A DNA stretch of 64,000 nucleotides. It comes from Mytilus californianus (taxonomy: Eukaryota). Positions 14,708 to 57,821 of the stretch are shown in pieces. The stretch covers positions 44,640,001 to 44,704,000 of the forward strand of contig NW_026262593.1 of the NCBI RefSeq assembly GCF_021869535.1. The letters run 5' to 3'. The position numbers and the translations under genes were made by a program. The notes below the pieces were generated by a model that made no database searches, was not told the DNA's origin, and saw only the letters and a list, made by a program, of their open reading frames with translations. The stretch's first letter is position 1. The number at the start of each line of letters is the position of its first letter.

Positions 14708-15676
14708 TAGTGACTGTATTGATTGATATAGAAGCAAACATTTAGATGATTTACTTACTAAACTTTGTCATCATAATTATTATTGTGTAGTACATTTCAA
14801 AACAGAGCGGTTTAAATGAATGTTATTTGACAATTATATGAAGAAACGTTTACACGACGTATACGGGTACTAGTTGATCAGAGAACTCGTACGCTTCCGA
14901 CGGAAATTTTGTTTTTAAAAGATAAATGTTGTGTTTTGTCGGTTATTAGTGGTATATTTTTGTATATTTGTGTGTTCTTATTTTTCAATGTCCATATTTG
15001 TTTTGTGTCGGTTAAGGTCTAGTGTATTCTTTTGAAAACAAATCTACAGTTTCCATTTCAAACTTTTACATAAGTCAATTGATACAATCGATAAATTGTA
15101 GAAATTGACATGTACCAACGGTTTAGAAAATGTGTTAACCAATTAAAGTAAGATAAATCAATTTATTATTTTGATAGGTTTTAAACATGATACATGTATA
15201 TTTAGTTAAAAGTACATGAGAAACATAACAAGCGCCACACATTGCTGCATGCTAATCTAGCCCTAATGGAGAATTACACGTTTTGATGGAGTTATGCTGC
15301 TAATTTAGAAAATAAATTCTATGTAGTGTTGTGCGGTCCAATTTGTCCGTTCTTCTATTTGCCGCTTTTTTTCATTTTGATACGATTGATTTGGAAAAAC
15401 AATAAACTTAATCTTAGCAATATTAATGAATTACGCGATTCTTTTTTTTAATGTGTATTGAATAGAAAATACGAATATTTATTCTGATATATCTTTTTTA
15501 TTTACTCAAATGATTCACTTTTTTCACTTGGCAATAATTCGTATTATATAACACGTTTCTACTTTAAAAGTTAAATGTATACATGTATCAGTTAGAAAAC
15601 AAATATGAATGTCGGAATATTGACGTTTATTCAAATGAATGGGAAAACATATTTATATAAAAGTAAAGAATTCAAA

Positions 15677-32800: not shown

Positions 32801-35800
32801 ATGTTTTTTACCGTGGTGAATTATTATTTCATCATCCATGTATCTGGCATAATAGGATATGTTTGTCTTGTAAGGAAATGACGAAAGAATTTCTTTCATT
32901 ATTTGATATACTCACTACAGCTGTGATGCACAAAACATGAGTTGTCGTCAATGCAGCCTCGGAAATTTAGAGACAATCTGAAACCAGGTGAGAGGTCAAG
33001 CATATCTTCACTTTTGCGAGACGAATCAATTCTTATTAAGAAAGCTGATAAAAGCAACAATGTTGTTATTCTCGATAAGAATATTTACTTATCCGAAGCT
33101 TAACGGCAATTACAATCGCATCATTACACAAGTCTTGACGGTTTTGACTTCAAGGTTTTCAGAAATAATATCAATGATTATGTCACTAGAATGCACATTC
33201 ATAAAGACATTGACAAAATTTCATTCAAATACATGATGAATGGCAATCAAAAAAATTACGGACCGGGACAAATGCATATATTACCGAAAATACATAAAAT
33301 AAATTTTGTAGATTATGACAATGTCATGAGTGTAGGATTTAATATTGATTTAATAGTTCCTCCAGGAAGACCTATGATTTCCCAGATTGGTACGATCACT
33401 GAATACATAGGTCGTTAGTTTGATTATTTCCTTGTGCCAATAGTTATAAAACACCATACTTTTATCAGAGATTTATCTGATTTTATACAAAAAATAGAAA
33501 CAAACCATTAGACAATTGCCTATTATGTAGTTTTGTTATAAGTCAGATGTTTACCAACTGTCCAATTGAAGAAATTCTTTTAGCAGTAAGAGCAGCATAT
33601 GATGCATATGATAAATCGCATTACAATATAAAATATCCCTCTACAGATGATTTAGTATCCCTCTTTGTTCTGCAATATAATATCTTTGAATTTAATGATC
33701 AATTATATCAACAATGTTTAGGTTCCGCAATTGGGGCCTGCTGTGCACCAGCATGTTGTAATATTTTATTATATCAAATAATGAAAGAAATGCTTTCGTC
33801 ATTTCCTTACAAGACAAACATATTTTATTATGCCAGATACATAGATGATGGAATAATAATTCACCACGGTAAAAAACATGAATTAGAAGAATGTTTTGAA
33901 TTGGCTAATTGCCACCACAAATTTCTCAAATTCACATATGAAATTTCAGAATCTAACACAACTTTTCTAGACGTTCATTTATTCAAGGGCAGAAGATTTC
34001 AAGCAGATAATATATTAGACATGAAAACCCATTTCAAACCAACGAAATAATTTCTATATTTGCACAGAAATAGCTCTCATAAGGAGTACGTGTTTAAAGC
34101 ATTTATCCGGGGGGAATTAATTCGTTACAGAAGATCAACAAACAATGATAATGACCTTAGAGAAATTCTCTTAAAGTTCAAACAGAATTTGATAAATAGG
34201 GGTTACAATGACACTGAAATCATGTCTTGCTTCAATGAGGCCTTAACCAAGGAAAGAAAACATTTGCTTTCAACTAAGGAAGGGAAACCTAAAGCGGATA
34301 TTCCTCTTGTAATGGCTACTAAATATAATCCTTGCATAAGCAAATTACGGAAACACCTTCTGAAACATTGGCATCTCATAAGAGATAATGTGGTTTGCAA
34401 TGAAGTAATCACAAAAACACCGATGATTGCTTATAAAAGGCACAGAAATTTATCAGATATTCTGACATCGACCAAGGTAAAGAAACAATATTTTTTTCAA
34501 ATATATAGGACAATCCCTGATGATGGCGGACCTATACATGCAATATAACAATATTTTATTCATCATATACAAAAAATACCGCCGAAACACTAGATTAGTG
34601 TAGGATTGATGCAAACATATATAATTTATAAATAACATATATCATACAAACTTGATGATTTCTTATCAGAAGGAATCTATCTCTTTATAAAAATAATTAT
34701 AGATTATGTGATAAAATAATTGCAGGACATTAGTTAAACCAATATATTTCAATATGGTTCCTAACATGAACCTTGCATTGCTCTATGAAAACAATGAGAG
34801 TAATTGTGTGAAGATGAAGAGGGAAGCCGTGGACACGTTGAGTTTCGTTTTATTTTAATTACTATTTCTAAAGTAGTTGTTAGAGAGGAATGGAGGAATA
34901 TGTAAACTACTAAGTTGTGTATCCATCAGAATACATTCATTAATATTTCATGCTTACAATTGAAATCTGAGAATCGATTTTTTAAATGTATAGGTTTAAT
35001 TTTTTCAGATTTCAAATATCTATGTACAAATACAATTACACTTTGATTCAAACATACGATTAGAATGAAGTGAACGAGGTTGATCCATGTTAAAGATCTC
35101 ACTGAATCTTTGTTATGCAGAACAGGAACGAGTGCGCCATGCGCTTGCTTTTGGATTTGTGTACATGTGGTGATTATGTGTCAAGAAGCACCATATCCAT
35201 GTATTCAATAATAGAATATTATAACGATGAAAAATATCACACTAAACTTGATTATTGGGAATGTATCGTTTTATATCTTTAAATGAAAACTCAGTGTACA
35301 AAACAAGTCCATTTAATGCATCCAAAATCCAGATCAGTCCAAAGATTTGTCTTTTATGAACCAAATGGAAAAATTTTAGCTTGTATGTATCATTCTTTTG
35401 CAATAATATCAACCTGCTATTAAAAATTTCAATGTTATAGTTATTTATATAAAAATAAGGAGATGCGGTATGATTGCCAATGAGACAACATTGTTCAAAT
35501 AAAGATGATGTAGCATATTTTTCGAATTGACGGCTTTTATTATAGTTTTCGAAATATTATTTTTTGTACATACACATACATGTTTGAACCTTAAGTTTAT
35601 TTAAAAATTCGTACCTTAAATGTATTTTTAGACACAGTATATGAACAAGTTGTTCCTTATCCACTTATAAAATACTACGGCAATGGTGTACCACCAACTA
35701 CATCTACAAAGAATCGTATGTATATCATTTAAAATTGTAATAAAAACTCAATTTAAACCGTCAATGTTATGAAATATATAACACAGATAGAATTCATGTT

Positions 35801-40038: not shown

Positions 40039-40268
40039 TTAGCATCGTTCGTAAATATCTACATATTGAGTAACATTCGTTAACCATGACGTTTTATCCC
40101 CGATGCTCCACAGATTGCAGACCCGTTGTAGATTATTAAGGTGTTGAAACGCATTACACTCTTGTTTAGCATCACACATGAATGCACATCTAATGACGCT
40201 GACACCATAAACAAAATCGATAGAATGACCATTGATAATTGTGACATTTTCTCGCCTGCAGTAATCAC
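40039..40268 (-). CDS. Terminal exon encoding a PAN/Apple domain
   Basis: GDYCRRENVTIINGHSIDFVYGVSVIRCAFMCDAKQECNAFQHLNNLQRVCNLWSIGDKTSWLTNVTQYVDIYERC*: six Cys in the C..CxxxC.xxCxAF...CxL...YExC pattern. Strong acceptor TTTATTGTAG, phase 1. The ORF track shows a different frame. Confidence 0.8.
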
Positions 40269-43200
40269 CTACAATAAAGGTAAAAAAGAAATTAAAAAAA
40301 AAAAGATAAATGAAATAAACAAAAATTATGATGTTATATAAATATGAATTTTGTTAAGTGTCATACTATGAAAATACGAATTTTGTTTGATTGAATTTTG
40401 CTGCTATAAAACTGAAATAATTTTAAATCAAAGAATATACCTCCCCTTTGCAAAACTATGATTGCTTTTCAAACTTCGGCTTTACTTAATGTCATTGTGG
40501 GTTTGATCAGCTATTCAACGTTTGTATACGTATTAGGTTTGGATTTTCAAATATTTGGGCCTGGACCATCGCTGAAGAGACATTTGTTGTTGAAATGCCC
40601 AACTGGTACAATACAGTTTGTACCATTAATGTAACTGTTTAATAGGATGGTTGTCGGTCACATAAGCCAATGGTATGTTAAAGATTGTGTATATGTGCGT
40701 ATTATTACAGTATCTCACTTCAGAGTTCTCTAACAAAAACTCCTCCTACGATATATTAAACAAAAATTATTATATTATCAATTATATATTTTATTAGATA
40801 TAGGTTGGTTAATGTTCGTAACAATGTAGTGTTGTTATAGAGTACTCATATAATTTGATTGACAATTATATACTTTTACTTAACACAATATTTTTAATTA
40901 AATGTGATGTAAGAATTTGTTGCAAAATCTTGATAAAAGTAGTTATGTTTATCGTCGATATTGTTGGGGAAATTTTATAGCAGTAGGCGAATAATGTCTT
41001 CAAAGACATTATGTCGACTGTCTTTCACATCGCCTTGGTAGCAGTTAGGTAATAGGAAATGATTTTACATAGAGGTCAATCAAAAAAGAAGAAAAGAATC
41101 AAAATCACCTTTCAAACATCATTTTCAAAGAACTAAATTGAAAATAGTTCAAGGTAATTTATAAACGTGTAGATTGAACTGCATTAAAGGCGTGTTTGAT
41201 AATGGTATCAATCCAATTAAAGCAAATCTTTTGATTTGATATTTGACATACAAAACTCTTGTTATTCCAGTTAGGAACTAGGAAAAGGAACATTACTTTA
41301 ACGACAACAAATCGAACATAGCATATGATACCAATACCAGGATTTATAATGTTGACGACACGCAGTGACGTAATATATCTTCATTCTCTACATTCTTGTG
41401 TTTATAGGTCAAATTCATAACATTTTTCAGAACATGCAAAAAATAAAAAACAAAAGAGTAGATAGAGAAAAAAAGTTTAGAGATACTTTTGGTTAAGAAA
41501 TATTATATGTCAATAAATGAGTAAATAATAAATATATTATAAACTGACAATAAAGTCAATTTCAGCCTACATCTTTCAAACACCAAAGCATCGGGTACTT
41601 GTCAGATGTTACCATGTGGAAAAAAATTCTGGAACACAAGTGGTACCGATGTCAGTGCAAATGGCTGTTCTAATCCGAGACATAGTATTCTGTCTTAATC
41701 AAATAAGTCACATTTGCGACGCAAAACTTAATGTATCATTTAAAAAAATAAAATAATAGTCAATAAATAGGGTCAAAACTTTACCTTTGTTTGTACACAG
41801 ATCATAATCCGGAACATTCCCAAGATCTACTTCTGTCGTTTCAGTACACATAATACCATCACCATGGTTTAGAACAATATATAAATCTTTCAGGCTTACA
41901 AGCGCACAGTTACACACGAGCCGATTTTCTGAAAGATCCCTTCAAAGAAAATATATTTTTACTGTCTGCACAGTTATGTTAATGATATTTTTTCTTACAA
42001 TTCTGAGTTTTTAAGGATTATTAACAATTATGATAATGTTCTTTTTCATATTGGTTAAAATGATAACTGAATTTGTTTTCAATTTCTTGTTTACCTTATT
42101 CTGTCGATTGAAAAAAAACTCGTATCTGAAGCTGAATTCCATGAAAAAGGTATAAAATATTCCAATGCATGGGGTCGTTCAGTAAAACATCAGTTTTTCC
42201 TCAATTGATATATAAACAGAAATGTAAAAAGTGAGGAGTAATGATAACTACTAGGATCTAACAAACATTGTATTTCATGTTTTCAATTATAAAACTACAA
42301 CAAAAGGTCATTCAAATTACTCTCAGTATATTGATATAGTTCAAATGTAGTTCCAGGATCATATCACATTTAATGAGTCCTGTATAAGAATTTAAACGTC
42401 ATTAAATCAATTGAGAGTAAAATTGGAGTTATTTTTATTTATGGAAATTATTTACATATTTATGTTCTAATCCATCCCTGTCTCAATTTTATTGACATGA
42501 TTATTCCTTTTTTTTTCCAATAAATTTATTTACAAATCGTGTTTCCTTTTCTCAATGAATGAGTTCATAAATCGGCTTAATTATTAAGTCAGGGATTTTG
42601 TTACCATAAAATACTTAAAACATTTATTAAGTTCTTTCATAGATTCAAAGATTTAATTTGTAAACTTGGCCGTACCTGTAGAAAACTTATTAAAAATGAT
42701 ATTTCACATCCTAAATTTTACAATAATATTGTACTAAAAGCGCAGAAATCACTATGCGATCCGTGTAAACTTATCGAACCTTTAAACAAACTTATTAGTA
42801 AAGGTTATCTTATTAATGTTGTAATAAGATCTTTGAATATTGTTTTCATTGGCATTAAGATCGATTTTGTCATCAACAAATTAAAACATAACTAAATTTG
42901 TATTCTTTTCGAATGTTTTTTTGGGATGTATATTTACACATCCACGTTTATTTTCTATTTTTCTATTTAGAAATTGTTTTATCTATACATAAAATCATAC
43001 ATATTTATCATAAGGTTAAATCCTAATTATTCTACTGCCTGTCGATTCTTTTAATTTGGCATTGCACAAGTCATGCCTTCTTTGACTGTCCATAGCGTTA
43101 AAACACTAAATTCCTGCCTGGGATGTGTTTTTATTGATTTTTTATTATTAATTGCTTTTGGCTTTTAATTAGCTTTAAGTGATTGCGAGTACTCTCAAAT

Positions 43201-46200
43201 CGTACTTTCGTGTGCCTGTTGACACAATGTGTAATTCATATTTGTTATTCAATGTTTACTTATTTTGTGTTATATCTCGTCTGACTATCTTTAATATGTA
43301 CCACCTTTTATAAGTACTTAGTATGACGAAAAAATGTTCACCTCTGTAGTTGTACTATGAATAACAATTTTGTTTTGTTAAAAATGTTTCTGTACTCCTA
43401 ACAACAAAATTATTGTATTTACATTTACCTGTGTACGTTTCTTTATTTAACGCCATCTTATCCTAGGTTAAAGTTGTTTTTTTGACATTGAAACATCTTT
43501 TTTATTTATATTGTGTCATAGATCAAACTTATTCGTTCAGTGTATATTACTTGGTTTTGTGCATTGTCTTTTTGATCGAGTTAAGCCATTTCAATTGATA
43601 TTTTATTGCGTGTCTTTTTATGTTGTAATGTTATACCACTGTTTCAGGTTAGGGTGAAGGTTGGCACCTGTTAAAACGTTTAAACTTGCTGCATTTTTAT
43701 GCACCTGTCCTAAGTCAGGAGCCTGTTTTTTAGTGGTTGTCGTTTGTTGGTGTGGTTCATCAGTGTTTCCAGTTTCTCGTTTTTTATATAGATTAGACCG
43801 TTGGTTTTCCTGTTTGAATTGTTTTACACGAGTCCTTTATAGCTTGCTGTTCGTTGTGAGCCAAGGCTCCGTGTCGAAGTCCGTACTTTGACCTATAACA
43901 TGTATGATTGTTTACCTTTTACACATTGTAATTTGGATGCATATTTGTCTCATTGGCACTTCTACCACATCTTCTTATTCATATGCATTGAAAAAATCTT
44001 GACCACTTACCTAAAACAAAGCGTTTTAATGAAACAAAAATGCACTAATATTAAATGGAGCCATGGAAATGCATTATTATTTCTTAATAATGACATCTGG
44101 AATGTAACTGCTCTTTCAGGAATTAGTTAAAAAAATGTAGATACTTACAAATACTCTAATTTTGTTAGTTTTTTGAAGATCTTCATATCTATCGATTTTA
44201 TCAGATTGTGTCTCAGGTTTCTTATAATATGAAAATAAATATGATAATTAAAATGCAGTAAACATATAGTATTTCATAAGAAGACTAGTAAACTACAGGA
44301 CAGGACAGAAACCTCAATACACTATTTGTCAACAACTGATAAACTGGGATTTTTTTTTGGCCCCAAATTGACAACTGTAGACTGAAAGCTGATATTCTCT
44401 GTTGGTTTTAAACATATACTCACTCAGTCTTATCAATACAACGGCGTTATAAACAACTGTCATACAAGTGGGAGGTTTAGTTAGTTATTTAACCAGGTCA
44501 AATCCACTAATTTCTTCTTATAATGCAAGTTCCAAGTCAGGTATAAAACATTATTTTCCATTCGTCCCTTTGTTTAACAAAGTCCAATGTTCGATTTTGT
44601 CAATTTTTATTGACCTCCCCTTTTTAAAGTTACATTGGAGTTCAGTATTTTTGTTATTATTCACAGTACTCGCAGTACTTGTATGTATAGAATAAAGAAC
44701 GATACTTGCAATTGTCGACTTAAAAATTTTCTTGACAATTTTATGGGACAGCAACCAACCAGCATGAACAAATAATAAACAAAGCATCTTGAAATTGAAA
44801 ACTGAACGATCAGAACAATGTCTGAAATTTCAAACTCAGCGTTAAGTAAACATTAGTCAAAGGATACCAAGAAGACATTCCAAACTAAAAAGTCAAAGAG
44901 AACTGACAACATGACAACAAATCGAAAGACGACAAAAACGTTTAGTAAACCGTACACAGAAAACAAAAAATTGAACAACTGGAGCTCCATCAAAAACTGG
45001 GATCTATCTCATATGCTGCGAAAGGGTTAGTTAATAAGATATAAGTTAGGGACTTTAGAGACTACATTTCGACTGGAATGGCACTTTATTTTGATGTAAA
45101 AATGACCTGACATTTCTAAATATAAGATAGTAAAAAAATATCATATAGAGATTTTCCGTTGTTTTCTGATATTAATATAAAAATAAGAAGATGTAGTATG
45201 ATTGAGACAACTCTCCACCAGAGAAATGACACTAAAGGTCACCGTTCGCATTCAACAATGAGTAAAACTCATACTGCACAGGCAGCTATAAAAGGCCCCG
45301 AAATGATAAATATAAAAACTATTCAAAAGAGAAAATTTACGGCGTGATTTATGTACAAATCAATGAACGAAAAACAAATATGATATACAGCAACAAAAGA
45401 CAACCACTGAATTACAGGCTCCTGACTTGGGACAGGCACACACCGAACGTAGCGGCATTAACCTAGTTTGTTTGTGCAAAATCCCCCTTAGCCTAGGATA
45501 GTGATGTAACTATACACATAAGAACAAACTATAAAAATCCGTTTAAATGGGCTGAGCTCATCAGATCAATACACAATTATTTGCTCAGATATTTTGTTCG
45601 TGGTCATTATTTGTAATGTAATTCTTCAGGAAATATGTCATGTTTTGTTTAGAATAGGTAAAACAGCCATTGAACTCTCGTGAGAAGTCTGAGCAAATCT
45701 GATATAACGTGATTAGTTGAAGTGTTTGTTCATATAATATTGATATATTTAGAAATACCAAATATTGCTTTATATTTTTGGTCAGACTTTTCAGGTTGGC
45801 CAATATCTATGCAAGCATCAATTTTGACAATCAATTTGATCAAAATGCCTTTTCAGTACGTACACCAATTATTCATTTATTTCAAACTTACAAGCGTTTT
45901 AATTCTTTCAAATCCTGGAACAAACCAGATATATCATTCACAAAATTGAAGGCCATCAATCTGCAGATAAAAATAAATGAATGTCAATAACTATTCAAGC
46001 AAAAATTTTGATAAATAAACTAACTATTGTTTATATGAACCGAATTATTATTCTGATGATAATTTTGTTTGCTTTAAAAATTTGTTAGAATATCATAATA
46101 TTTTTGTAGAAATAACCGTCGTCTCTTTTTTATTTGTGATTCTCTAAATGCATTTGAGATTTAGCGAAAACGTTTAAATAGTTTTAAAGGGGCATTTTTA

Positions 46201-49200
46201 ATTTGTCTATGAGATATTGAGTTTGGAACTCTGTCCAAAGTTGAAGCGAAATGCAATATAAAAGATGTGTTAAGAGTAAATCGGCGGTAACTTTGTCGTT
46301 TCCAAAACCCATCTGAAAATACTAATTTCGGACAACCTGGTCATAAGGTGACTAGGCTACAATTTTACAGTTGGACGCATCACTTTCAACGAAAACTTCA
46401 TATTTGTAGAAAAATCAAATTTCCTTTTAATTTAGAATCTATTCCGGATAGGTTCCCAATAACTGTTTGTTTTTTATCTGAATATAACTTTTCATCCAGA
46501 TAGTAAATTTGTAAATAAGTGTTATTTAAGGTATGTCTAATGAGTCATGGTTTTCTATTTTTAAACTAAAATTTTCCCAGTCCATCAATGTCATTCAGCC
46601 TCTGTCTGGACTTTACATATAAAATTGAGATAACTCAAAACAACATTTATTTTCAATGATTAGATTTGACTAATCGGAAACGGAGATATATATATAAGAA
46701 AGGAGAAAGATACAAAAGGGAAAAATTATTATTTACCATTTACAGCGAGATCAATATTTTTTCAAAAGGCTGTGAAAAGACGAAATGATTACAGTTGACA
46801 TACCCGAATGCCTAATATGAATGATTCCAATAATAGAAATAGGCTTGTTATACACCGTTTTGTAGATAATTTAATGTAAATCTACGGAATAGCAAGTTTC
46901 AGTGGTATAGACAACCGCAAAATTAAAGGATAACAGAAGTTCGCCACCGGGTGACATTTCTTTAATATACGAGTTAAGATGTCCTGTGCTGTCGTTAATG
47001 GAAGATGTTCGTTGTTATTCTACGGTTTACATGTTGTTGTTATATTATTTGTTTGTGCGTTTTTCGGTGCTGAGTGTTCTTGCGTTTGTTTGTGCTGTAT
47101 TTCTGTCACGTAGTGTTGTCATTTTAGCGATATTCTTTAACATTGCCATATAAGCGGGAGGTTTCGCTAGCCATTAAACCAGTTTCAACGCACCATTTTA
47201 TCTTAAAATGTCCTGTACAAAGTCAAGAATATGGCAGTTTCTATCAAATTGTTCGTTTTTATGTATATTGGCGTTTGTTTTTGTTGTACTTCAGTGTTTT
47301 TATTGTTCCGTTGTTTTCCTCTTATAATTGATGTGTTTCCCTCGGTTTAAGTTTGTAACCCGGATTTGTTTTCTCTCATTCGATTAATGACTTTTGAACA
47401 GCAGTATACTACTGTTGTCTTTATAAAGAACTTTGTGTTATATTACAGTATATAGGTATTTATTTCAGAGACAAGTGTCTGTGGTTTTATACTTATTTCA
47501 AACTTAAGTTTCGAATTCGTTTACACTAAGTAAGTAAGTCAGAATTCGCTTCTTTTATGCTACAAAAATGGGTTTTTTTAGTACCTAAATACTTTGTGTT
47601 TTTCTCTATTTCAAATTCACAGTCATTGAACGAAAAACAAAAAGAAAACTGCTCTTTATCTTTATCTTTATTTCAAAATATCCTAACGAAATTATAAGCT
47701 TTGTACTGTGTATATATTGTTAAAAGTTAACAGCATGAGCCTCTTTTCTATCATGAATTGTATTAAACAAATATATCAGTATATGGGAATTGAATAGTTT
47801 TTGTACCAAACTTTAAAGTTTGGCACCTCATAACTTTGGAAGTTTAGATTAGATTAAAATATAATTCAAATCCAAAAGATGAAAAAGAGGTAAATGTAGA
47901 TTAGGAAATAATCTTGATGATCAAAATAATCAGGAAATTTATAAAAGCACAACAAACGAGAACTGTAATACAAATTCATAGACAATATAACCATATACAG
48001 AACACTCTATATCTGAATCCTGCAAATTGAATAATGATATAGTAAGTCATTAGTTATATTCAAAAAGTATATCCGTCTTTTTATATTGAAAAATGCAACT
48101 CACAATTCTTCCAATTCGTAAAGTCCTCGAAACACACCCTTTTCAACCAGTCTGATGTTATTTCTTGATAATAGTCTGACAGCAAAAATAAAACAAAGTG
48201 CTTGAAAATATTACCGTTGAAAATGAAACTTTTATGCAAACAATTATAGGTATATCAACAAGTGTTATTATCCATGGTAAATTTCATGATGCAATGTGTT
48301 CAAATCGTGATAATAGTTTTGAGTATTGAGGAGGACGAGCCCATTCATAAAATGTAATAAATCTTATGACGGTAAAGCGATTCATGGTCCACAGGTACAA
48401 ATTCGGTGAACGGTTGTTTAGGGTATAGAAAAGAGAGGCTGGAGATACCAAAGGGATATTCAAACTCATAAGTAGGAAAGGAACAAATAATGCCAAGCAA
48501 AAAATTAAATACAACCGAAGGACAAACAACAATTTACAAAACACAAAGACTGAACAACAGTCAGGTGTGATCTCAGATGTCCAGAATGGTTGTCAAATCC
48601 TGCTCGACATGTGACACACGTCTTGTTGCTCTTATAGTATATATGTCGCACCATGAACAAGGAGAGAAGAACGGATTTATAGCTACAACAACTGTTATAC
48701 AGGAATTTTAATACTGTCAAACAAAGTGTGGTGGCTTGAAATGAAATATCTAATGAATAACTTAACAAATACCATTGAAACCCGTGTAAGAAACATCCGC
48801 TTTCGATTAAATTCTGATATAAAACGCAACACTTGGTATATGTAGTCAGTTGAAAGATACATGCTTCATATGTAAGTGTTGTCGGACTATTGCTAAATAA
48901 AAATTCCTTGTATGCATGTCCAAAGCATGTGCCTTTAGTCCAATAGCTGTCATGGGTTACCGTAAAATGTTTTAACGATGACTTCAACTTAACCACTTGA
49001 AAGCCTTGGTTTAATTTCTTCTTTATTAGCAACAAGTCTCTATCAATTGTGATAAGAAACGAATATCGTATCATACTCCATGTGTATTAGTAGGTTACCG
49101 ATATTCAAATCCCGAGAATCAATTTTGAAGATATAAATGAAGTGCATATGAACTTTAATTAGAGCGAGGCAGGATCGTACGTTACCTGTAGGGGTGTACA

Positions 49201-52200
49201 TCCTTGTGACTTGACCTTTTGTCAAAAGCTGTCACATTGGCAATCACATCTCCTTTCAAAAATGTATAAACAAATAAAACCGAAGAAATCAGAGAAGGAT
49301 TTGAAAGATCACTTTTCATGAAAGATCACTTTTCGTACATATGAAAGGGGGTTCGATTTTCTGTATTTATCTGTTCATATAAAACAATAACAGACGTTCA
49401 GTATTGTTTTCCTTATTTCATGTTAGTATATTTGGTTTTTTTCTCATAAGAGCCTTCTGAATGAAACTAAGTAAAGCTACGTACATGCGCTGAAGATGCA
49501 TCATTTTTTCAAAAGTTCCATTTCTCAAAATATGAAGCTGATTCATTTGTAGTTTTCTAATAAAAATGAAAAATATTGAATAATTGTTTTGAAACGCGCT
49601 CCAAATTTTATTTTGTTTCAGTATTAAAATTTGTAATAAATAAAATGATTGTTTTCAATACACTTGAAAGAAAAAAAGAAACTATTTGCAATTTGAAATA
49701 TATGTATCGCTAGTAGTTTCTATTCACAATGTTTACAGTAATTTTATACATTTTGTTGACAAAGTCTGACGTACAAAAGTCTATCTGTTTATGTGAACTC
49801 ATTACAAAGAAATAAATAATGAAAATCTGTAAAACCTTATCTTTTATTGAAAAGAAACAACAAATTTCCCTATCTAAACATAACACTTAACTAAGTAAAC
49901 TCACAACTCGATCAGTCTAGACAGAGGGCTAAATACTCCTTCACCAAAATCTGTTATGTCATTGTTTAGTAAGATGCTAAAAGTAATAAAGAACTTTATG
50001 TATTTATTTGGGTGATGTTTATTTATAAAACAGTAAAAAAAATGAACAATAGAGAAACGTAATGCATTGATTATTCCAGCCCGCTGCAGCAGCTGCCACT
50101 AGAGATTGTTATTCTAAATCGTAAATTGAGTAGAGAGTAATGCTCATATCACTTGTTATATGTTTAGATCTGAAACCAATAATTTGTGCTGCATACTCCA
50201 AACTGCTTTTTGTTCTATAACAAGCTGTGTTGATTTTAAGACATAGGGACACGTAATATTAAAAATAAGTAAGCCTAAAAATTAGGGAATATACAATAAG
50301 TTTCAACTAAAGAAGAAAAAAGAGTGTAAGACCTCCACGCAAGGTAAATACGAGTCAAATAGAAGTTAAATCTAAATTAACTACGGTTCCGGAAGAGCTT
50401 TTTATATGAATGTGATAAAGGAATGCTTCTATTGGCCATACTCGATCACGTGATATCGTTTTTGGCACTTTGCACTGTGATCCAATAAAACAAAAGATTA
50501 CAGAAAATTACGATCCAGACACTAATTGTTCCTAAAGTTTTAACAACAAAAATTTACTCCTAATGATTGTTTCATTGAAATAGTCAAATGAACTCTTGTC
50601 CATACTTTGAGACAGTGATTGACTAACTATGGCTGAAAAAAAGACAATCCAGAATGTGTCTGTCACCAGTAAAAAAAAGTTAAACTATAACACCAATCGA
50701 TAACTGAAACGGCTATATATAATCCTTTACGAGATGCAATGCCCATTGTAAAAAATCATATAAGATGGAATATTTATTTTTGATTTTGATTTACAGATCT
50801 TTAATGTCTCTTTAATACCTCAAGTAATACTTCAATGCGTCTATCGTAACTAATAATAATAATCATACACTTATACAAAGTGTCCGTTTCAATGATTATA
50901 AGATAGAAAGGAAACTTGATTCATAAAAGTTTTTCAATTAACCGTTAGGTAGAATCACATTTTGTATATGATAGTATATATTTGGTGTTAATTCGATTCT
51001 ATACTTTATTGGGACTATACTTTTATGAGAAATAATTTGTGTACTGTAGTGCTCTTTGTAAAATACAATTATTAAGTGCAAGTCTTTGTAAGAATCAGGC
51101 AAATTAAAAAAAATAAATTAAAAAACATGGCCGAAAAAACCCACCGACCTAACTATCTTATTTTGAAGTTATTCTCATCCTGAGTTAGAAATGGTAGGTC
51201 TTTCGTTTCTGCTTGTCTGGTAATTCGAAAAATCTCTAGTCAACTTTTGGTTAGACTGATATCAAATAAAGGAGTTAGCTTCCCTTAATTGTTAATTTCT
51301 AGTGCATTTGAACTAAATCATATCACGAATTACCATAACTGGGAAAAGAAACAAATGTTCATGCACCATTATACAATTTGAACATAAATTAATGTCAACA
51401 TGGGTAGTTTTATGATTGTCATGTCTTCACCACTGTCTGATTCTTAGGCTGATTGGCAATTAGTAAATAAAATTTCTGACGAAAAACCAGTGGCAGCTGT
51501 CGGATGTCATTCATTTGTGTATAATATGCATTGTCTTTTTTCTCTCACAAAGATTCGTTCGTTTGATGCCATGTTTCTACCAAAACAGACAGCCAATGTG
51601 AATTCAAGGAAATGTGTATTTGAGAATATTGAAGAATATACTAAACTATTGATTATTGTTAGCAGAACATAAAAGAGGACTGTCACAATGTCACTTTGTT
51701 TTGTGGTAAAAAAATCAAATACAACAAAAGAAGGTTGTAAATCACGTTTTTTCCTGAATATTCATTTCGTATTAAAAATGTTCACTATTCACTTTCCTGT
51801 GTTAATGTTTCATAGAAATTTAACAATAGTCATTAAAACTAAAGATTTGGGTGTTTTGCATTATTTTTGTACATTAGGAGGTAAACTGTAAGCAGTGTAC
51901 AGAAAAAGACAATCTAACTGACAGCAACATTGCTAATCGATTTTGCTGGACCACGACCTAAAGGGACAAGTCCTCAAAATAATCGCCAAACTGATGTACT
52001 GATAGTAATGTGAAACTTAATAGAAACTAACTATGTTATTTATAATAAGTGGTTCCTATCAATCTGACTTAATGAAAAAACGTAACATTGAAAAATGCTT
52101 ATTCATTCAAAGTCACAAGACCATGACCTAGAAAACAGACCAACGAAGTAGTCATCAAATTGAGATGTGTTGATATTAATGCAACTTAAAAAAAAATAAT

Positions 52201-55200
52201 TCATCAATCACATGTATCACAAGTAGTTCCTATCAAACAGAATTGAACAGAAAACTTAACAAATGATAATGCCGCCGCCGGAAAAGCAACACTCATGTCG
52301 CACCTTCCGCGACTTTTATCTCAGCCGAGACAAACAGCAATGCATTCTTGCAAACCTGTTTTAAGATACAAAACGTCTAATCACCGACAGCGAGGAAAAT
52401 TAAACGTTAACTGTACTAATGCATTTACAATATCGCAATTATAAACAATGAAAGAATACTAAACTTACAGTGTTTCAAGGTTCAACAAATCTTCAAATAC
52501 CCCATTCTGTAAATACTGTATCTGGTTTCTTTGATAATTTCTAAACATTAAGAAGGAAGATAAATGAGTGATATTAGTATTGCACCCGGTTTTTAATGGA
52601 ATTAGTGCTATCTCTCTGTATATTTAATGAGACTGACTAACGTCTAAGTGAAAGATAGTTTGTCTTTAATTTTTATTTTTTATTGTTTAACAGTTGCTGA
52701 ATCTATTTCATGATACCTGTAGATTCACATAATATCACGATAGCCAAAGTAAATCTAGGGATAAACAGCAGTTAACTGGCAAACTCTTGACAATAATGCA
52801 TTATATGTTTTACACGTAAATTCAGATGCGCACGCTTTGTCATTTTTAAAAATTAACTGATCTTGTATCGATACTTTCCCCCTCACGTCCCCAGAGATGT
52901 GATATACGAATGTGATGTGTCCGTGCAAATATGAATATCCACAGCATAAACTAGTCACAGATTTCATAGTTGTAAATGAAGATAAAATGTGTTTTTCTTT
53001 ATGACAACACTTGCAAAATATGTACATTCCTGGAATACCGTCCAAACAATGCAATAAAAAGAACCAACTTTCGACGATTTTCCTACAAGATGTTGTCAAT
53101 GGATTCTTTAATACAAAATATCATCATCAATGGAAATGGAAACAAAATACATTCGACATTGATATACTCAGGCAAAAAAAGTTTGTAGATTGTATTATCC
53201 ATGCATTAGTTGTATTCATAGACATAGACCACAAGTATAGCTTTTCTGAATAAGAAATTTTAATTCGAAGAGAAAAGTGTTTTTCATAATGGGGAGTTAT
53301 ATGAGTACATGGTTTTGTTATACAAAGACCTTCCATGATTTCTTTCTTGTACCCTTTTGCAAATTGTGTTGTCTGTTTTTTAAGGATATAATCATTTAAT
53401 CGTTTTTCCCTGCAAACTATATAATTTCCCCATGTTGGCGTTCAATCTAAAAAATAAGTTGTTCCCTAGATTTATGTTCCATTTAGTGCCTTACAACATA
53501 TCCAAAGTGCAATGTAATTCATCACAGTATATGGAATATTATATTTATCAAGTGTAACTACTTACAAAACTTGCAGGTTATACAATCCACGGAAAGTTTC
53601 ATTATGAATACTTTCGAATTCATTGCGACCCAGGAATCTGATAGAACAGAAAGCAGAAGGTTAATACACAACAATTTCAAAAGGATGGTCGACTTGCATT
53701 TTTTGATGATTAACAGCGGTCGTTTAACCACTGGTATTGTCGTCAGTAGATTACACCTTTATTATACTATTAGTATACATTATTTATTTATTTGAACTGC
53801 AAGTCATAGTGCAAGGCTAACAGTGCTAAAATTAACGTTTATGTAAATAAAAACTTGAACAAACATTGGGATTTCTAAGTTACTACAGTTAAATAATATA
53901 TCGACATACTTGCAACTGGTTGTACTAGATATTTTATATTTTATCTCTTTATTTATTAGATTGAGTTAATGGATATTTCATTGACAAAATGTTATCAGCT
54001 CTAAATATAAAGAAATTGAATGTCCCTTAAGTATATTTCTCATCTCTTCTACCATAAACTTACAGTTTGTTAAGATTATGCAAACCAAAGAACAATTCCT
54101 CTTTAATAGCCTTGATGAAGTTTCCCCCTAAATTTCTTGTAAAAAGGAAAATGATTTATATTATAGAACGTGAGTGTTAGTAAATGTTAAGCTTCATCTC
54201 ATGTAAATATGTAATAACATAATATAAGCATACTAGAGGCACTACAGTTATTCAACATGTTATGTATATCACAATTTACAGATGCTTGATATTTTAGCAT
54301 AGCAATTATTATTGGATTGTGAAATGCCATCTACTGCAAGTTTTTTATTTCATAAAGGTTTTGTAACTTAATTTGTATAAACTTCAAATCTGAGCAGCAA
54401 CAAACATTTTCAGTACAAAGTTGAGTTTTGGCATAGATATTGCACGATAACATAAGTTTTATATTCTCGAAGGAAAACATGTATTCTGGTAGCTTTATAA
54501 CAAGATATTGATGTAAAAATACATGATGAATTCGACTTACATTTTGTTCCATTTTCTACAGCAATACTTACAGCAGTGTCAGATTTGTTAGAGAGCTAAA
54601 GGCTTTTGCTGGCAATTCTGTTATTTTATTTGATTCCAAAGATCTATAACAATACCTTATATATCATCATATGTAGCAGCATTAGTTTAAGTCAAGTAAT
54701 TTTTTTTATAAAAAATTAGAATAAATAATAATAAAAAAATATGCCATTCCTGGATTTCTATCATTTTGAAGCTTAACTGAATCTTAATTTATCCTTATCT
54801 TTATATTTTCAAATGAGCAATTAGTGATAACAAAAAAGATCAACTCGAAGAGGCAAGACTTTAAGTCATCGAAAACAATAATTGTCGTCTTACTTATAAA
54901 AAACAAACTTTAAAATTAAATGATAAGAACAAATGAAATTGGGATTCGGTTTACCAATTACATACAAACTACAAATATACTTACAGGATTGTAAGTTTAC
55001 CCAAACCTCTAAATGTATCATTCCTTATTGTTTCAATGTCATTTTCAAATAAGATCCTAAAAATAAATATTGTTTCTATATCAAATAAATGAAAGAGATA
55101 ACATTATACATTATATTATGTACATGTACCTATCGATACATTTTAAAGTATGTGCATTTTGTGACTGTTTTTTTTTACATGTTTGTGTTCTCCTTCCTTG

Positions 55201-57821
55201 ATAATATTATAACTAAGTATTGATCAAATTGCAAAAAGTCACGAAACGTGAATCCTTCTGAAAATTATGGTCAGACACCTTAGATAGAAAAAGAATTTTC
55301 CTTCAGGTTTGACATTGAAATGAATAGTGTTTCTTTGTATTATAGTGTAATCAACCGTAGGATTTTAAAAAAGATTGAAGGTTTTTGTTTTTTTCAAAAT
55401 TTGGCCGAAGATATCTTTTAACTTAGCATTACTTTAATTCTATCTAATCTCTACAGAAGACTAAATGGTTATGATTGATTCTTAAATTTATTTCTCTTTT
55501 GTATAAAAAATCATATTTATGATTTAACCGATTAAAGACTTCTTTTCAGCATTTATGACTAATTTAATGATATGGATAATGTTCATTTTTGAAGACAAGT
55601 ATTTGTATGCATCCTTTTCCTTTGGTCTTTTTTTTAAATTAACATTTGCCTCATTGGCAATCATATATTTCCTTATTTTACACATATCTGAAACTTGTGG
55701 TATTGAACAGGACCGTTCATGACAATAAAAGAAATATTCTAGGAAATACTGTTGGCGATATTAGAGAAGAGTAAGATATGTGGTCTGTTGTCTATAATAT
55801 TGACATCATATAATTAAGCACTATTTCGGGGCTATTGATTTGTACATTCCTCCATGAATTTTCTGTTACTGAAGTCAAAAATTTCTTGTTGACCACTATG
55901 TTCGAGATAATGACGTTAACATTGTATCAAACTGATATGATTTGTAACAATAGTTTCAATAGATTGGCATGAAATTTTTATAATCCAGGAGCTAATAATC
56001 CGATGAAAATCTTATCGTACCAGAAAAAAATGTGTTACTTTTCAAACAATTTATGTTTTATAATATCTTGAAATTTAGAATTCATTCCTCTGCATGTAAG
56101 CTTTCTCCAAAATCAATGATAAACATACTTACAAATGATGTAATGTTTGTAATGTAGAAAAGACATCTGGTAGTGTATCTTTATGTGCCTGTGCCAAGTC
56201 AGGAGCCTGTAGTTCAGTGGTTGTCTTTGATTCATGTTTGTCGTATTTGTTTTTTCGTTAGTTGTCTTGTTATAAATTAAGTCGTTAGTTTTCTCAATTG
56301 AATTGTTTCATAGTTTTCATGTCGGGGCCTTTTTTAGCCGATTATACCGTATGGGTTTTTTTCTCATTGTTGAAAGCCTTACGGTTGACTTTAATTGCTT
56401 ACATCCACTTTATTTGAACTTTGGTGAATAGTTGTCTCATTGGCAATCATACCTCATCTCCTTATTTTTATATACTTACAATTGATCTAATGTAATTAAT
56501 GTAGAAAAGACACCTGGTTGTATTTCTTTAATGTTATTTGATTCTAAGATCCTAAAAGTATAAATTACGCACTTAATCATTGTGTGTTTGGGTTTTTTCT
56601 TGAAAGTATTTTGCTCTGATATTAGTACTGTACAACATAGAACTTTTTCATAGCGTTATTTGTTCTGAAAACTTGTCTTTTTGTCCGAATAGACTTGATA
56701 CAATCAATTGTTACAATTATACTGTTATATACTCTGTTATACATGTTATATTTTAGGATTGATATCAACATGAAGTTTGAATACCACTAAACATTTTTCA
56801 TCAAATATGTTTTTTCTGGTTGCAATTTTTCTACCATGGGCATTAAACAAAGTCTTTTCTCTCGCACTGTCCATGGCGTTACTGTTCGAACACAAAAACA
56901 GAGTGTAGTATGCATAGTTACCAGATCATCAGAAATAGTACTTTAACTAGTTCCCAGTAACTGCCTATTTTCTGTGGTACTATATCAATTTTTGTAGATA
57001 TACCTAATACTTAGGCTATTGAACCACATGACTTTTATCAACTAACTTTTTTATTTGCTTGTCATGTCGTTCGAGTTGTCGTATCGTTAAGTTGCTGTCT
57101 TATTGCTGTAAACACCACGTTGCATTTCATATGTACAAACTGTATGATACCAAGAACACATGTACAGTATTATATGTCTCTGATGATACCAAATGGCCTT
57201 ACTAATTGTGCCTTATGTGTGGTTTAATCATTGGCAATCTATATATAACAAATAGATTACTAGCACATCTGCCACATGGCAATATCAAAAAAATGATCAG
57301 CCGATTCGTTTTCAACATTCAGTATTCGTTTTCAACATTCAACATTCGATTTCAACATTCAGCATTCAAAAATAAATTTTTCATTTTTTTTATTCAACAT
57401 TCGACTTTAATGTTCAACATTAGTTTTCAACATTCAACATTCGTTTTTAACATTCAACATTCGATTTTACCATTCAAACGAATGTTGAATGCTGAAAACG
57501 AATAAAAAAAAAAAAAATAAAATTGAAAAGAATTTTTGAATGTTGAATGTTGAAAATGAATGTTGAATGTTGAAAAAAAAAGAATGTTGAATATTAAATA
57601 TTGAACCAACTTGACATCCGTCTTGAATAGACGTTTTAAGGTAAGGAAGATACTTACAATCTTTCGGTTTGCTCGAAAATACCATTAGGAATTGACGTCA
57701 AATTTCTACTAATACACGATGTTTGTTGTTTTGAACAGGAACACTGATCGGGACACGACACTTCGCATTCACACTGGCGAATGAATAAAGCAACTTGGAT
57801 CAGAAAATAGGTGAACAGCAT
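40039..57821 (-). CDS. Predicted secreted LRRNT-(LRR)x11-LRRCT-PAN/Apple protein (~472 aa if the 71-nt exon is corrected, 448 aa if skipped)
   Basis: Exons on - strand: 57821-57658 (MLFTYFLIQVALFIRQCECEVSCPDQCSCSKQQTSCISRNLTSIPNGIFEQTERL); LRR exons 56551-56480, 55056-54985, 54643-54572, 54135-54064, 53637-53566, 52539-52469 (71 nt), 49976-49905, 49556-49485, 48175-48104, 45960-45892 (69 nt), 44220-44149; LRRCT 41939-41785 (DLSENRLVCNCAL...C...C); linker 41693-41613; PAN exon 40268-40039. All are GT-AG with compatible phases except the 71-nt exon. Additional LRR exons could have been missed. Confidence 0.85.
42580..42897 (+). mobile_element. C-terminal fragment of a retroelement RT/thumb region (intronic, antisense to the LRR gene)
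   Basis: LLSQGFCYHKILKTFIKFFHRFKDLICKLGRTCRKLIKNDISHPKFYNNIV...KGY...RSLN. Resembles the KLLxQGY..KLxK.FxKF thumb motif of PLE-type RTs, recognised from memory. Confidence 0.6.
48940..49085 (-). mobile_element. Degraded RT thumb fragment
   Basis: IRYS..DRDLLLIKKKLNQGFQVVKLKSSLKHF matches the LIRYS..LLxQGF..KLKSSLRKF motif. Confidence 0.6.
56133..56183 (-). pseudogene. 5'-truncated LRR exon remnant, paralog of exon 56551-56480
   Basis: KDTLPDVFSTLQTLHHL|GTAAGT versus KEIQPGVFSTLITLDQL|GTAAGT. The acceptor side is replaced by a dispersed repeat (56184-56468). Confidence 0.7.
57300..57605. repeat. Head-to-head heptamer satellite (TTCAACA)n ... (TGTTGAA)n
   Basis: ATTCAACATTC units at 57305-57470 and GAATGTTGAA units at 57478-57605, around a poly-A spacer, in intron 1 of the LRR gene. 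Confidence 0.8.

What the first reader, a model, noticed from the sequence alone, without database searches (positions are those of the whole stretch)
40039..57821. Secreted LRR solenoid fused to a C-terminal PAN/Apple domain
Signal peptide, LRRNT, 11 typical LRRs, LRRCT, a 27-aa linker and one PAN/Apple module, with no TM or TIR seen. I do not recognise this architecture from characterised proteins. LRR concave faces and PAN domains both bind proteins or glycans, suggesting a soluble bifunctional recognition or bridging molecule. It is nearly invisible to the ORF track.
Basis: partly seen in the sequence, partly recalled or inferred. Interest (0 to 1): 0.75.

Follow-up and report, generated by a model that had tools for sequence, protein, structure and literature searches.

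The report
Mussel secreted LRR protein with PAN/Apple tail

Summary
On the minus strand, 57821-40039, 14 GT-AG exons give a 445-aa open frame. They encode a hydrophobic leader plus LRRNT, eleven one-repeat LRR exons (ten of 72 nt, one of 69 nt), an LRRCT exon and a terminal exon. That last exon is a PAN/Apple domain by Pfam (above the cut-off), by its cysteine pattern and by predicted fold (Z 10.3 to plasminogen PAp).

The 27-aa "linker" exon (41693-41613) is rejected. It is one of 17 chance open AG..GT stretches in that intron, it is disrupted in M. coruscus and unalignable in M. edulis, and none of seven database models contains it.

All 14 exons lie in the same order in M. coruscus and M. 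edulis. In M. edulis they again give a 445-aa frame. Seven predicted proteins from four Mytilus species join LRRCT directly to PAN. UniProt names three of them "Apple domain-containing protein", and no paper describes any of them.

The PAN exon is conserved (dN/dS 0.20-0.35). The LRRs change faster, mainly on the concave face. No membrane span or GPI tail is present.

The most likely reading is a soluble recognition or bridging protein. Earlier notes of this scan report LRR-TSP1 and LRR-EGF cassette-exon genes elsewhere in this genome, so this is one more variant of that theme.

The parts
57658..57821 (-). Exon 1 (164 nt): ATG, hydrophobic leader, six-Cys LRRNT cap and the first partial repeat. 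It ends in intron phase 2.
   Evidence: ORF list. GTAAGT donor. Pfam LRRNT 20.4 bits, sub-threshold. 92% identical to M. coruscus and 90% to M. edulis. TATA-like motif at 57869.
56480..56551 (-). LRR exon 1 (72 nt, phase 2-2)
   Evidence: AG/GT borders and LRR pattern. LRR_8 14.8 bits on the single repeat. Orthologous exon in L001 and L003.
54985..55056 (-). LRR exon 2 (72 nt)
54572..54643 (-). LRR exon 3 (72 nt)
   Evidence: LRR_8 18.9 bits
54064..54135 (-). LRR exon 4 (72 nt)
53566..53637 (-). LRR exon 5 (72 nt)
52469..52540 (-). LRR exon 6 (72 nt)
49905..49976 (-). LRR exon 7 (72 nt)
49485..49556 (-). LRR exon 8 (72 nt). Its M. coruscus counterpart carries a 2-nt insertion.
48104..48175 (-). 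LRR exon 9 (72 nt)
45892..45960 (-). LRR exon 10 (69 nt, a 23-residue repeat)
   Evidence: Also 69 nt in M. coruscus and M. edulis.
44149..44220 (-). LRR exon 11 (72 nt)
41785..41939 (-). LRRCT exon (155 nt): the last LxLxxN strand plus the four-Cys C-terminal cap. It shifts the intron phase from 2 to 1.
   Evidence: Translation and splice sites. 97% identical to M. coruscus and 86.5% to M. edulis with no indels. The donor is identical in three species. Pfam LRRCT gave no hit on this piece.
41613..41693 (-). Rejected: this is intron sequence.
   Evidence: One of 17 chance candidates. Frameshifting insertions and a stop in M. coruscus, no match in M. edulis or M. galloprovincialis. Absent from seven database models. 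No Pfam hit.
40039..40268 (-). Terminal exon (230 nt): a 75-residue six-Cys PAN/Apple domain and the TAA stop
   Evidence: PAN_1 22.6 bits against a 21.4 cut-off. All remote phmmer hits are PAN proteins. Cys pattern. AF2 pLDDT 82 with a sheet-plus-helix fold. Z 10.3 to plasminogen PAp, 9.2 to the HGF N domain, 8.5 to FXI apple. 96% and 86% nucleotide identity to orthologues, against 81% and 66% for the adjoining intron. dN/dS 0.20 and 0.35.

Best explanation
A Mytilus gene encodes a secreted, glycosylated protein of about 49 kDa. It consists of a capped LRR solenoid (LRRNT, 11 repeats, LRRCT) joined directly to a single C-terminal PAN/Apple domain.

Shown:
- the 14-exon structure
- the identity of both modules
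- conservation of every exon, phase and the stop codon in two other Mytilus species
- purifying selection on the PAN exon
- faster change in the LRRs, concentrated on the concave beta-face

Inferred:
- The hydrophobic leader sends the protein out of the cell. With no membrane span or GPI tail, it stays soluble.
- The fast-changing concave LRR face binds variable targets.
- The conserved PAN/Apple module binds a constant partner, either a glycan (as in the apicomplexan PAN lectins) or a protein (as in factor XI apple domains).
- The molecule would therefore act as a recognition-and-bridging adaptor. It most plausibly works in humoral defence, like the soluble LRR-only pattern-recognition proteins of scallops.

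My confidence that the architecture is real is about 0.8. My confidence in the immune-type bridging role is about 0.4.
For: - Gene model: canonical splice sites and a 445-aa frame.
- M. edulis chromosome locus L003: the same 14 exons with equal lengths and all AG/GT borders give a 445-aa open frame 71.5% identical to the window protein.
- M. coruscus locus L001: all 14 exons are found.
- Seven predicted proteins from four species join LRRCT to PAN.
- PAN identity: Pfam above the cut-off, all remote hits are PAN_1 proteins, four invariant core Cys plus a terminal pair, fold Z 10.3 with rmsd 2.0 A over 70 of 75 residues.
- Selection: PAN dN/dS 0.20 and 0.35, LRRs 0.70 and 0.57.
- Concave-face x positions differ in 42% of comparisons against 24% at convex or loop x positions, Fisher p 0.001.
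- Exons are more conserved than introns.
- No TM-like segment, 16 Cys and 7 N-glycosylation sequons.
- Scallop LRR-only proteins bind PAMPs (PMC5877582).
Against: - No transcript-derived protein fragments were found. The 0.50 and 0.43 word shares in runs X18 and X19 are of unknown library type.
- The database models are genome predictions and may share the same bias.
- Orthologue PAN scores fall below Pfam's cut-off (18.0 and 18.5 bits).
- The AF2 alignment contained true PAN domains, which favours that fold.
- The two pairwise comparisons share the window sequence and are not independent.
- No signal-peptide predictor was available.
- The immune role rests on analogy only. The closest solved LRR ectodomains (LRIG1, LRRTM, LGR4/5, NgR) are developmental or neuronal.
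Confidence: 0.62

Rival explanations
1. The same protein works as a developmental, neural or matrix adhesion and guidance factor, like Slit, tsukushi, LINGO, LRRTM or NGL ectodomains. The PAN domain would tether it to matrix glycans. It would not be an immune recognition molecule.
For: The best sequence matches of the LRR part are LINGO3, tsukushi-like, connectin and artichoke-like proteins. The best solved structures are LRIG1, LRRTM, LGR4/5 and NgR. The HGF N (PAN) domain binds heparin; this comes from the PDB entry titles.
Against: Identity to those families is only 28-36% and is generic to capped LRRs. The family was found only in Mytilus. It evolves fast (overall dN/dS 0.52-0.57) with concave-face turnover. 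That is unusual for conserved developmental ligands.
Confidence: 0.22
2. The LRR-PAN junction is an annotation artefact. The PAN exon would belong to another transcript, or the LRR gene would end at or near the LRRCT exon.
For: No RNA evidence was obtained. All support comes from genome-based predictions. Reading through the LRRCT donor gives a stop after 26 codons.
Against: - The LRRCT exon has no in-frame stop and ends at a donor that is identical in three species.
- It ends in phase 1, and the PAN exon starts in phase 1 behind a conserved AG.
- No other conserved exon lies in the intron.
- The read-through tail is broken by indels in M. coruscus.
- Three annotation projects and NCBI's RefSeq pipeline all make the same join.
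Confidence: 0.08
3. The locus is a silent or decaying gene copy in this species. It would be an intact-looking member of a fast-turnover family that is not expressed.
For: No transcript-derived relatives were found in the protein collections. The M. coruscus copy has a 2-nt insertion in LRR exon 8. The RefSeq models are truncated to 140 and 205 aa.
Against: The frame is open across 14 exons in this window and in M. edulis at dS of about 0.28. PAN dN/dS is 0.20-0.35. All splice sites are intact.
Confidence: 0.06
4. The 81-nt linker exon is a genuine exon, specific to this species or used alternatively.
For: In this window it is open, keeps the frame and has AG and GT borders.
Against: It is no better than 16 other chance candidates. 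It is not conserved and is absent from all models. Its polypyrimidine tract is weak.
Confidence: 0.04

Closest known systems
Uncharacterised Mytilus predicted proteins: CAC5368918.1 (M. coruscus), CAG2208671.1, CAG2202557.1, CAG2252644.1 and XP_071145573.1 (M. edulis), VDI07207.1 (M. galloprovincialis), XP_063408435.1 (M. trossulus)
   Same: They are orthologues and paralogues with the same LRR, LRRCT and PAN/Apple layout and the same LRRCT-PAN junction. PAN identity to the window is 71-96%.
   Different: All are automatic predictions. Several are truncated or skip LRR exons. Their names are inconsistent ('netrin-G1 ligand', 'NGR', 'LRRC70-like', 'Apple domain-containing protein'). None is studied.
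PAN/Apple domains: plasminogen PAp, HGF N domain, factor XI and prekallikrein apple domains, Toxoplasma MIC4, Sarcocystis SML-2 lectin
   Same: The fold matches (Z 10.3 to 8.1). The C-x3-C-x5-C core is present, with the apple-type extra Cys pair at the two ends.
   Different: Sequence identity is only 15-20%. Those domains are attached to kringle or protease modules or to other PAN copies, never to an LRR solenoid. The ligand here is unknown.
Capped extracellular LRR ectodomains (LRIG1, LRRTM, LINGO, NgR, LGR4/5, IGFALS, LRRC15)
   Same: They share typical 24-residue repeats between Cys-rich N and C caps (E 2e-58 to 1e-31). One repeat per 72-nt exon is a well-known layout in such genes; that point is from my own knowledge.
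   Different: Those proteins continue into Ig domains, a TM helix, a GPI anchor or a 7TM domain. This one ends in PAN with no anchor.
Bivalve LRR-only proteins (scallop CfLRRop-1 to -6)
   Same: They are soluble molluscan LRR proteins without TIR, reported to bind LPS, peptidoglycan, glucan and poly I:C (PMC5877582).
   Different: By definition they carry only LRRs, 1-4 LRR domains each. Homology to this protein was not tested.
Lamprey variable lymphocyte receptors
   Same: They have an LRRNT, LRR, LRRCT solenoid with variation on the concave face. VLR-C was the first hit in the feature search, at 0.86, which is below the level that can be trusted.
   Different: VLRs are assembled somatically from cassettes. 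This is an ordinary spliced germline gene with a PAN tail.

Membership tests
PAN/Apple domain (Pfam PF00024 PAN_1) | Match to the family profile at or above the curated cut-off | tested here: met
   The window exon scores 22.6 bits against a cut-off of 21.4, covering profile positions 11-73 of 76. The orthologues score only 18.0 and 18.5 bits.
PAN/Apple domain (Pfam PF00024 PAN_1) | Four core cysteines, with the C-x3-C-x5-C motif and a later partner | tested here: met
   C27, C31, C37 and C50 are invariant across 30 aligned PAN sequences.
PAN/Apple domain (Pfam PF00024 PAN_1) | Apple subtype: an extra Cys pair that ties the N and C termini | tested here: met
   C3 and C75 are invariant in all seven aligned Mytilus PAN domains, the window's included. 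The disulfide bond itself cannot be tested here.
PAN/Apple domain (Pfam PF00024 PAN_1) | Fold: an antiparallel sheet cradling one helix | tested here: met
   AF2 gives pLDDT 82 with strands and helix 24-33. All of the top 50 Foldseek rows are PAN-like domains. Z is 10.3 with rmsd 2.0 A over 70 residues. Caveat: the alignment used for folding held true PAN domains.
PAN/Apple domain (Pfam PF00024 PAN_1) | Binds a protein or carbohydrate ligand | not testable with these tools
   This needs binding assays.
Capped extracellular LRR proteins | Tandem typical LRRs (LxxLxLxxNxL, 24 residues) | tested here: met
   Eleven repeat exons. LRR_8 scores 169.8 bits on orthologue P0001. E 2e-58 to LRIG1.
Capped extracellular LRR proteins | LRRNT cap | tested here: inconclusive
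   Pfam LRRNT scores 20.4 bits against a cut-off of 25.8. The Cys cluster is present and conserved.
Capped extracellular LRR proteins | LRRCT cap | tested here: inconclusive
   There is no Pfam hit on the 51-residue piece. The CxC...C...C pattern after the last LxLxxN is conserved in all eight sequences.
Capped extracellular LRR proteins | Signal peptide | tested here: inconclusive
   A 13-residue hydrophobic stretch after the Met is conserved in orthologues. No predictor was available.
Toll-like receptors | Transmembrane helix and cytoplasmic TIR domain | tested here: not met
   The stop follows directly after PAN. The maximum 19-residue hydropathy is 1.3. No TIR appears in any Pfam scan of the family.
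Netrin-G ligand (LRRC4) and Nogo receptor (RTN4R), the names given to paralogues | NGL: an Ig domain, a TM helix and a PDZ-binding tail. NgR: a C-terminal GPI signal. | tested here: not met
   There is no Ig or TM, and the protein ends at the last PAN Cys with no hydrophobic tail. The names are transfers from generic LRR similarity.
Bivalve LRR-only proteins | No domain other than LRR | tested here: not met
   A PAN/Apple domain is present.

The most novel reading that the evidence does not exclude
Mussels may carry a lineage-specific family of humoral receptors with two working parts. The first is a germline-diversifying LRR solenoid built from phase-symmetric 72-nt cassette exons. These can be duplicated, as in the M. 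galloprovincialis paralogue, or skipped without breaking the frame. The second is a conserved PAN/Apple 'handle' that docks bound targets onto a fixed host glycan or protein. Together with the LRR-TSP1 and LRR-EGF genes noted elsewhere in this genome, this would form a modular 'variable LRR plus constant adaptor' recognition system.
Probability: 0.15. Interest if true: 0.7.

Novelty: new variant of a known kind. Interest (0 to 1): 0.4.

Why it matters
Bivalves have no adaptive immunity and depend on large, fast-evolving sets of recognition proteins. A soluble LRR solenoid fused to a PAN/Apple module is a domain combination for which I found no characterised example.

Its evolution is split. 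The concave LRR face changes quickly while the PAN domain is conserved. This gives a clear hypothesis that each domain can be tested for separately.

Pfam-based architecture searches miss the family, because the orthologues' PAN scores fall just under the cut-off. Current annotations also name it wrongly (netrin-G ligand, Nogo receptor). The corrected 14-exon model and domain call are therefore useful for mussel genome annotation.

The finding is modest. Domain shuffling among mussel LRR genes is common, and neither expression nor function is shown.

Tried and rejected
After that I sent none of those letters to any search tool. Local searches used a copy masked at those places, or stretches beside them.
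- Sequencing runs: shares of 0.50 and 0.43 in X18 and X19 equal roughly the exonic share of the query. The library type is unknown, so I do not count this as expression.
- Searches for transcript-derived fragments: the word search with the LRRCT+PAN part of P0001 found only genome predictions. The PAN exon alone found nothing.
- Single-sequence AF2 of the PAN exon gave pLDDT 46 and an all-helix model. I discarded it.
- A Mytilus-only PAN profile against PDB sequences gave only a weak hit to the PAN module of a fungal oxidase, E 0.027.
- The ESM Atlas feature search returned generic LRR clusters at or below 0.86.
- Literature searches for LRR plus PAN/Apple in molluscs or Mytilus, and for the seven accessions, found no relevant paper.
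- The taxa of the remote PAN hits P0003-P0009 could not be learned, because their sources carry no names.
- Rejected readings: the linker exon, TLR, netrin-G ligand, Nogo receptor, LRR-only protein, and tandem paralogues in this window. On the last point, tblastn of the model found no further LRR or PAN exons outside the gene.
Full report
**What is in the sequence**

The window is AT-rich (about 30% G+C) and has no N runs. It behaves like animal DNA with very short exons. On the minus strand, the ORF at 57821-57654 opens with a Met, a 13-residue hydrophobic stretch and a Cys-rich LRRNT-like cap (Pfam LRRNT 20.4 bits, below its cut-off).

A scan for rotated 24-residue LRR patterns, followed by a scan for open AG..GT units, found eleven single-repeat exons. 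Ten are 72 nt and one is 69 nt. Each begins with one base that completes a Leu codon split by a phase-2 intron.

Next comes a 155-nt exon (41939-41785). It carries the last LxLxxN strand and a four-Cys LRRCT-type cap, and it shifts the intron phase to 1. The terminal exon is 230 nt (40268-40039). It encodes 75 residues with six Cys, and a TAA stop follows directly after the last Cys. All splice sites are canonical. The coordinates in the finding are exactly the coding span.

**The linker exon is not real**

It is open and keeps the frame, but four results count against it:
- The usable 1463 nt of that intron hold 17 such frame-preserving open AG..GT stretches, and six are longer.
- In the orthologous M. 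coruscus locus the stretch carries a 1-nt and a 19-nt insertion and a stop. In M. edulis it cannot be aligned, and M. galloprovincialis has no match.
- None of the seven related database proteins contains it. All read ...DLCT[NS]K-GD[YF]C....
- Both flanking introns are phase 1, so the direct 41785/40268 join keeps the frame.

The direct join gives a 445-aa protein instead of the 472 aa with the linker.

**The last exon is a PAN/Apple domain**

- Pfam PAN_1 scores 22.6 bits against a cut-off of 21.4, over nearly the whole profile.
- An exhaustive phmmer search of 1.84 billion representative proteins gave two close hits, both Mytilus proteins. The seven remote hits (E 6.5e-10 to 7e-4) are all multi-PAN proteins by Pfam.
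- An alignment of 30 PAN sequences shows four invariant Cys, including the C-x3-C-x5-C motif. The Mytilus proteins add a conserved Cys at each end, which is the Apple pattern.
- With that alignment AlphaFold2 gave pLDDT 82 and a sheet-plus-helix fold. The single-sequence run was useless.
- The top 50 Foldseek rows are all PAN-like domains.
- VIA-align gave Z 10.3 (rmsd 2.0 A, 70 of 75 residues) to the plasminogen PAp domain. It gave 9.2 to the HGF N domain, 8.5 to factor XI apple 4, 8.4 to TgMIC4 and 8.2 to the SML-2 lectin.
- Caveat: the alignment used for folding contained genuine PAN domains. A Mytilus-only profile reaches only E 0.027 against a PAN module in the PDB.

**Comparative support for the whole gene**

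The two close hits are genome-predicted proteins of M. coruscus (CAC5368918.1, 96% identical over PAN) and M. edulis (CAG2208671.1, 73%). Word searches added VDI07207.1 (M. galloprovincialis), CAG2202557.1, CAG2252644.1 and XP_071145573.1 (M. edulis), and XP_063408435.1 (M. trossulus). UniProt names three of them "Apple domain-containing protein". NCBI names include "netrin-G1 ligand", "NGR" and "LRRC70-like". Beyond Mytilus, similarity drops to 28-36% and is generic LRR matching (LINGO3, tsukushi-like, connectin).

I fetched the loci and mapped the window's exons onto them.
- M. coruscus (L001): all 14 exons lie in the same order at 86-98% identity. The annotated 339-aa model simply skips four LRR exons. 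One of these, exon 8, has a 2-nt insertion in that assembly.
- M. edulis chromosome assembly (L003): all 14 exons have the same lengths as in the window and all have AG/GT borders. They concatenate to an uninterrupted 445-aa frame that is 71.5% identical to the window protein. RefSeq annotated only the last 205 aa.
- Exon versus intron conservation: the PAN and LRRCT exons are 96-97% identical to M. coruscus and about 86% to M. edulis, without indels. The intron between them is 81% and 66% identical, with partial coverage.

The window therefore comes from a Mytilus mussel. It is closest to M. coruscus among the genomes I could compare (dS about 0.12) and further from M. edulis (dS about 0.28).

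**Selection pattern**

| Part | dN/dS vs M. coruscus | dN/dS vs M. edulis |
|---|---|---|
| PAN exon | 0.20 | 0.35 |
| Exon 1 | 0.20 | 0.39 |
| LRR exons | 0.70 | 0.57 |
| LRRCT exon | about 2.1 | about 2.1 |
| Whole gene | 0.52 | 0.57 |

The LRRCT figures rest on few changes.

I then placed the ten 24-residue repeats in register. The solvent-exposed positions of the concave strand (x2, x3, x5, x7, x8, x10) differ in 42% of comparisons. Convex or loop x positions differ in 24%, and core positions in 10% (Fisher p 0.001). The two pairwise comparisons share the window sequence, so this result is indicative and not a formal test.

**What it most likely does**

The protein has a leader, 16 Cys (6 + 4 + 6, an even number within each module) and seven N-glycosylation sequons. 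It has no membrane-span-like segment and no C-terminal hydrophobic tail. It is therefore most simply a secreted soluble glycoprotein.

The pattern of a variable concave LRR face and a conserved PAN suggests a two-handed adaptor. The LRR would recognise changing targets. The PAN would hold a constant glycan or protein partner.

Soluble LRR-only proteins of scallops bind LPS, peptidoglycan, glucan and poly I:C (PMC5877582). That makes a humoral defence role the leading guess, at about 0.4. A matrix or neural adhesion role is the main rival, because the nearest solved LRR ectodomains are LRIG1, LRRTM, LGR4/5 and NgR. All of this is inference, and no binding or expression data exist.

**What could not be shown**

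I sent none of those letters to any search afterwards and worked beside them.
- Runs X18 and X19 hold about half of the sampled words of a query that is about half exon. Their library type is unknown.
- No transcript-derived protein fragments turned up.
- The LRRCT-PAN join therefore rests on conserved phase, conserved splice sites, the absence of any other conserved exon, and seven concordant gene predictions from four annotation sources.

**Comparison with known things and novelty**

I found no paper describing an LRR plus PAN/Apple protein in molluscs, and none naming these accessions. The names "netrin-G ligand" and "NGR" fail their defining features, because the protein has no Ig domain, no TM helix and no GPI signal. 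The orthologues' PAN scores sit just under Pfam's cut-off, so precomputed Pfam lists show only LRR families. That hides the architecture from Pfam-based searches.

The architecture is nevertheless already in public databases as unstudied predictions. Earlier notes of this scan report several other cassette-exon LRR genes in this same genome, fused to TSP1 or EGF modules, also with concave-face turnover. I therefore class this as a new variant of a known kind, a secreted capped-LRR protein with an unusual C-terminal module. It is so far restricted to Mytilus and is of moderate interest.

Noticed in passing
L001:12223-12296 (M. coruscus counterpart of window 49556-49485): LRR exon 8 carries a 2-nt insertion relative to the window, which breaks the frame in that assembly. 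The deposited 339-aa model skips LRR exons 6-8 and 11. This may be a real lesion or an assembly error.
   Followed up: partly
L004:12868-16328 (M. galloprovincialis paralogue VDI07207.1): A block of four LRR exons is tandemly duplicated. It includes one degenerate 75-nt copy at 15614-15688. The locus therefore holds about 15 cassette exons against 11 here, so LRR number varies between paralogues by exon-block duplication.
   Followed up: partly
window 41939-41785: The LRRCT exon shows dN above dS (about 2.1) in both the M. coruscus and the M. edulis comparisons. It rests on few substitutions and has not been tested formally.
   Followed up: no
window 41784-41708: Reading through the LRRCT donor would add a 26-residue, partly hydrophobic tail before a stop. 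The stretch has frameshifting indels in M. coruscus, so an anchored intron-retention isoform looks unlikely.
   Followed up: partly
P0011 (M. edulis CAG2202557.1), C-terminus: This model loses the last PAN Cys and runs into seven copies of an 8-residue repeat (GIPTLRQF). It looks like a prediction that reads into a tandem DNA repeat.
   Followed up: no
P0001, P0002 (orthologues): Their PAN_1 scores (18.0 and 18.5 bits) fall under Pfam's 21.4 cut-off, so precomputed Pfam lists show LRR families only. The architecture is invisible to Pfam-based queries, although UniProt labels the proteins as Apple.
   Followed up: yes
By its own message this is a filter that also trips by chance. I left them out of all later searches.
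   Followed up: no
window 33547-34548 (+): Two adjacent ORFs of 167 and 162 aa lie inside the stretch that another note of this scan calls a Penelope-like element. They are outside this gene and I did not examine them.
   Followed up: no
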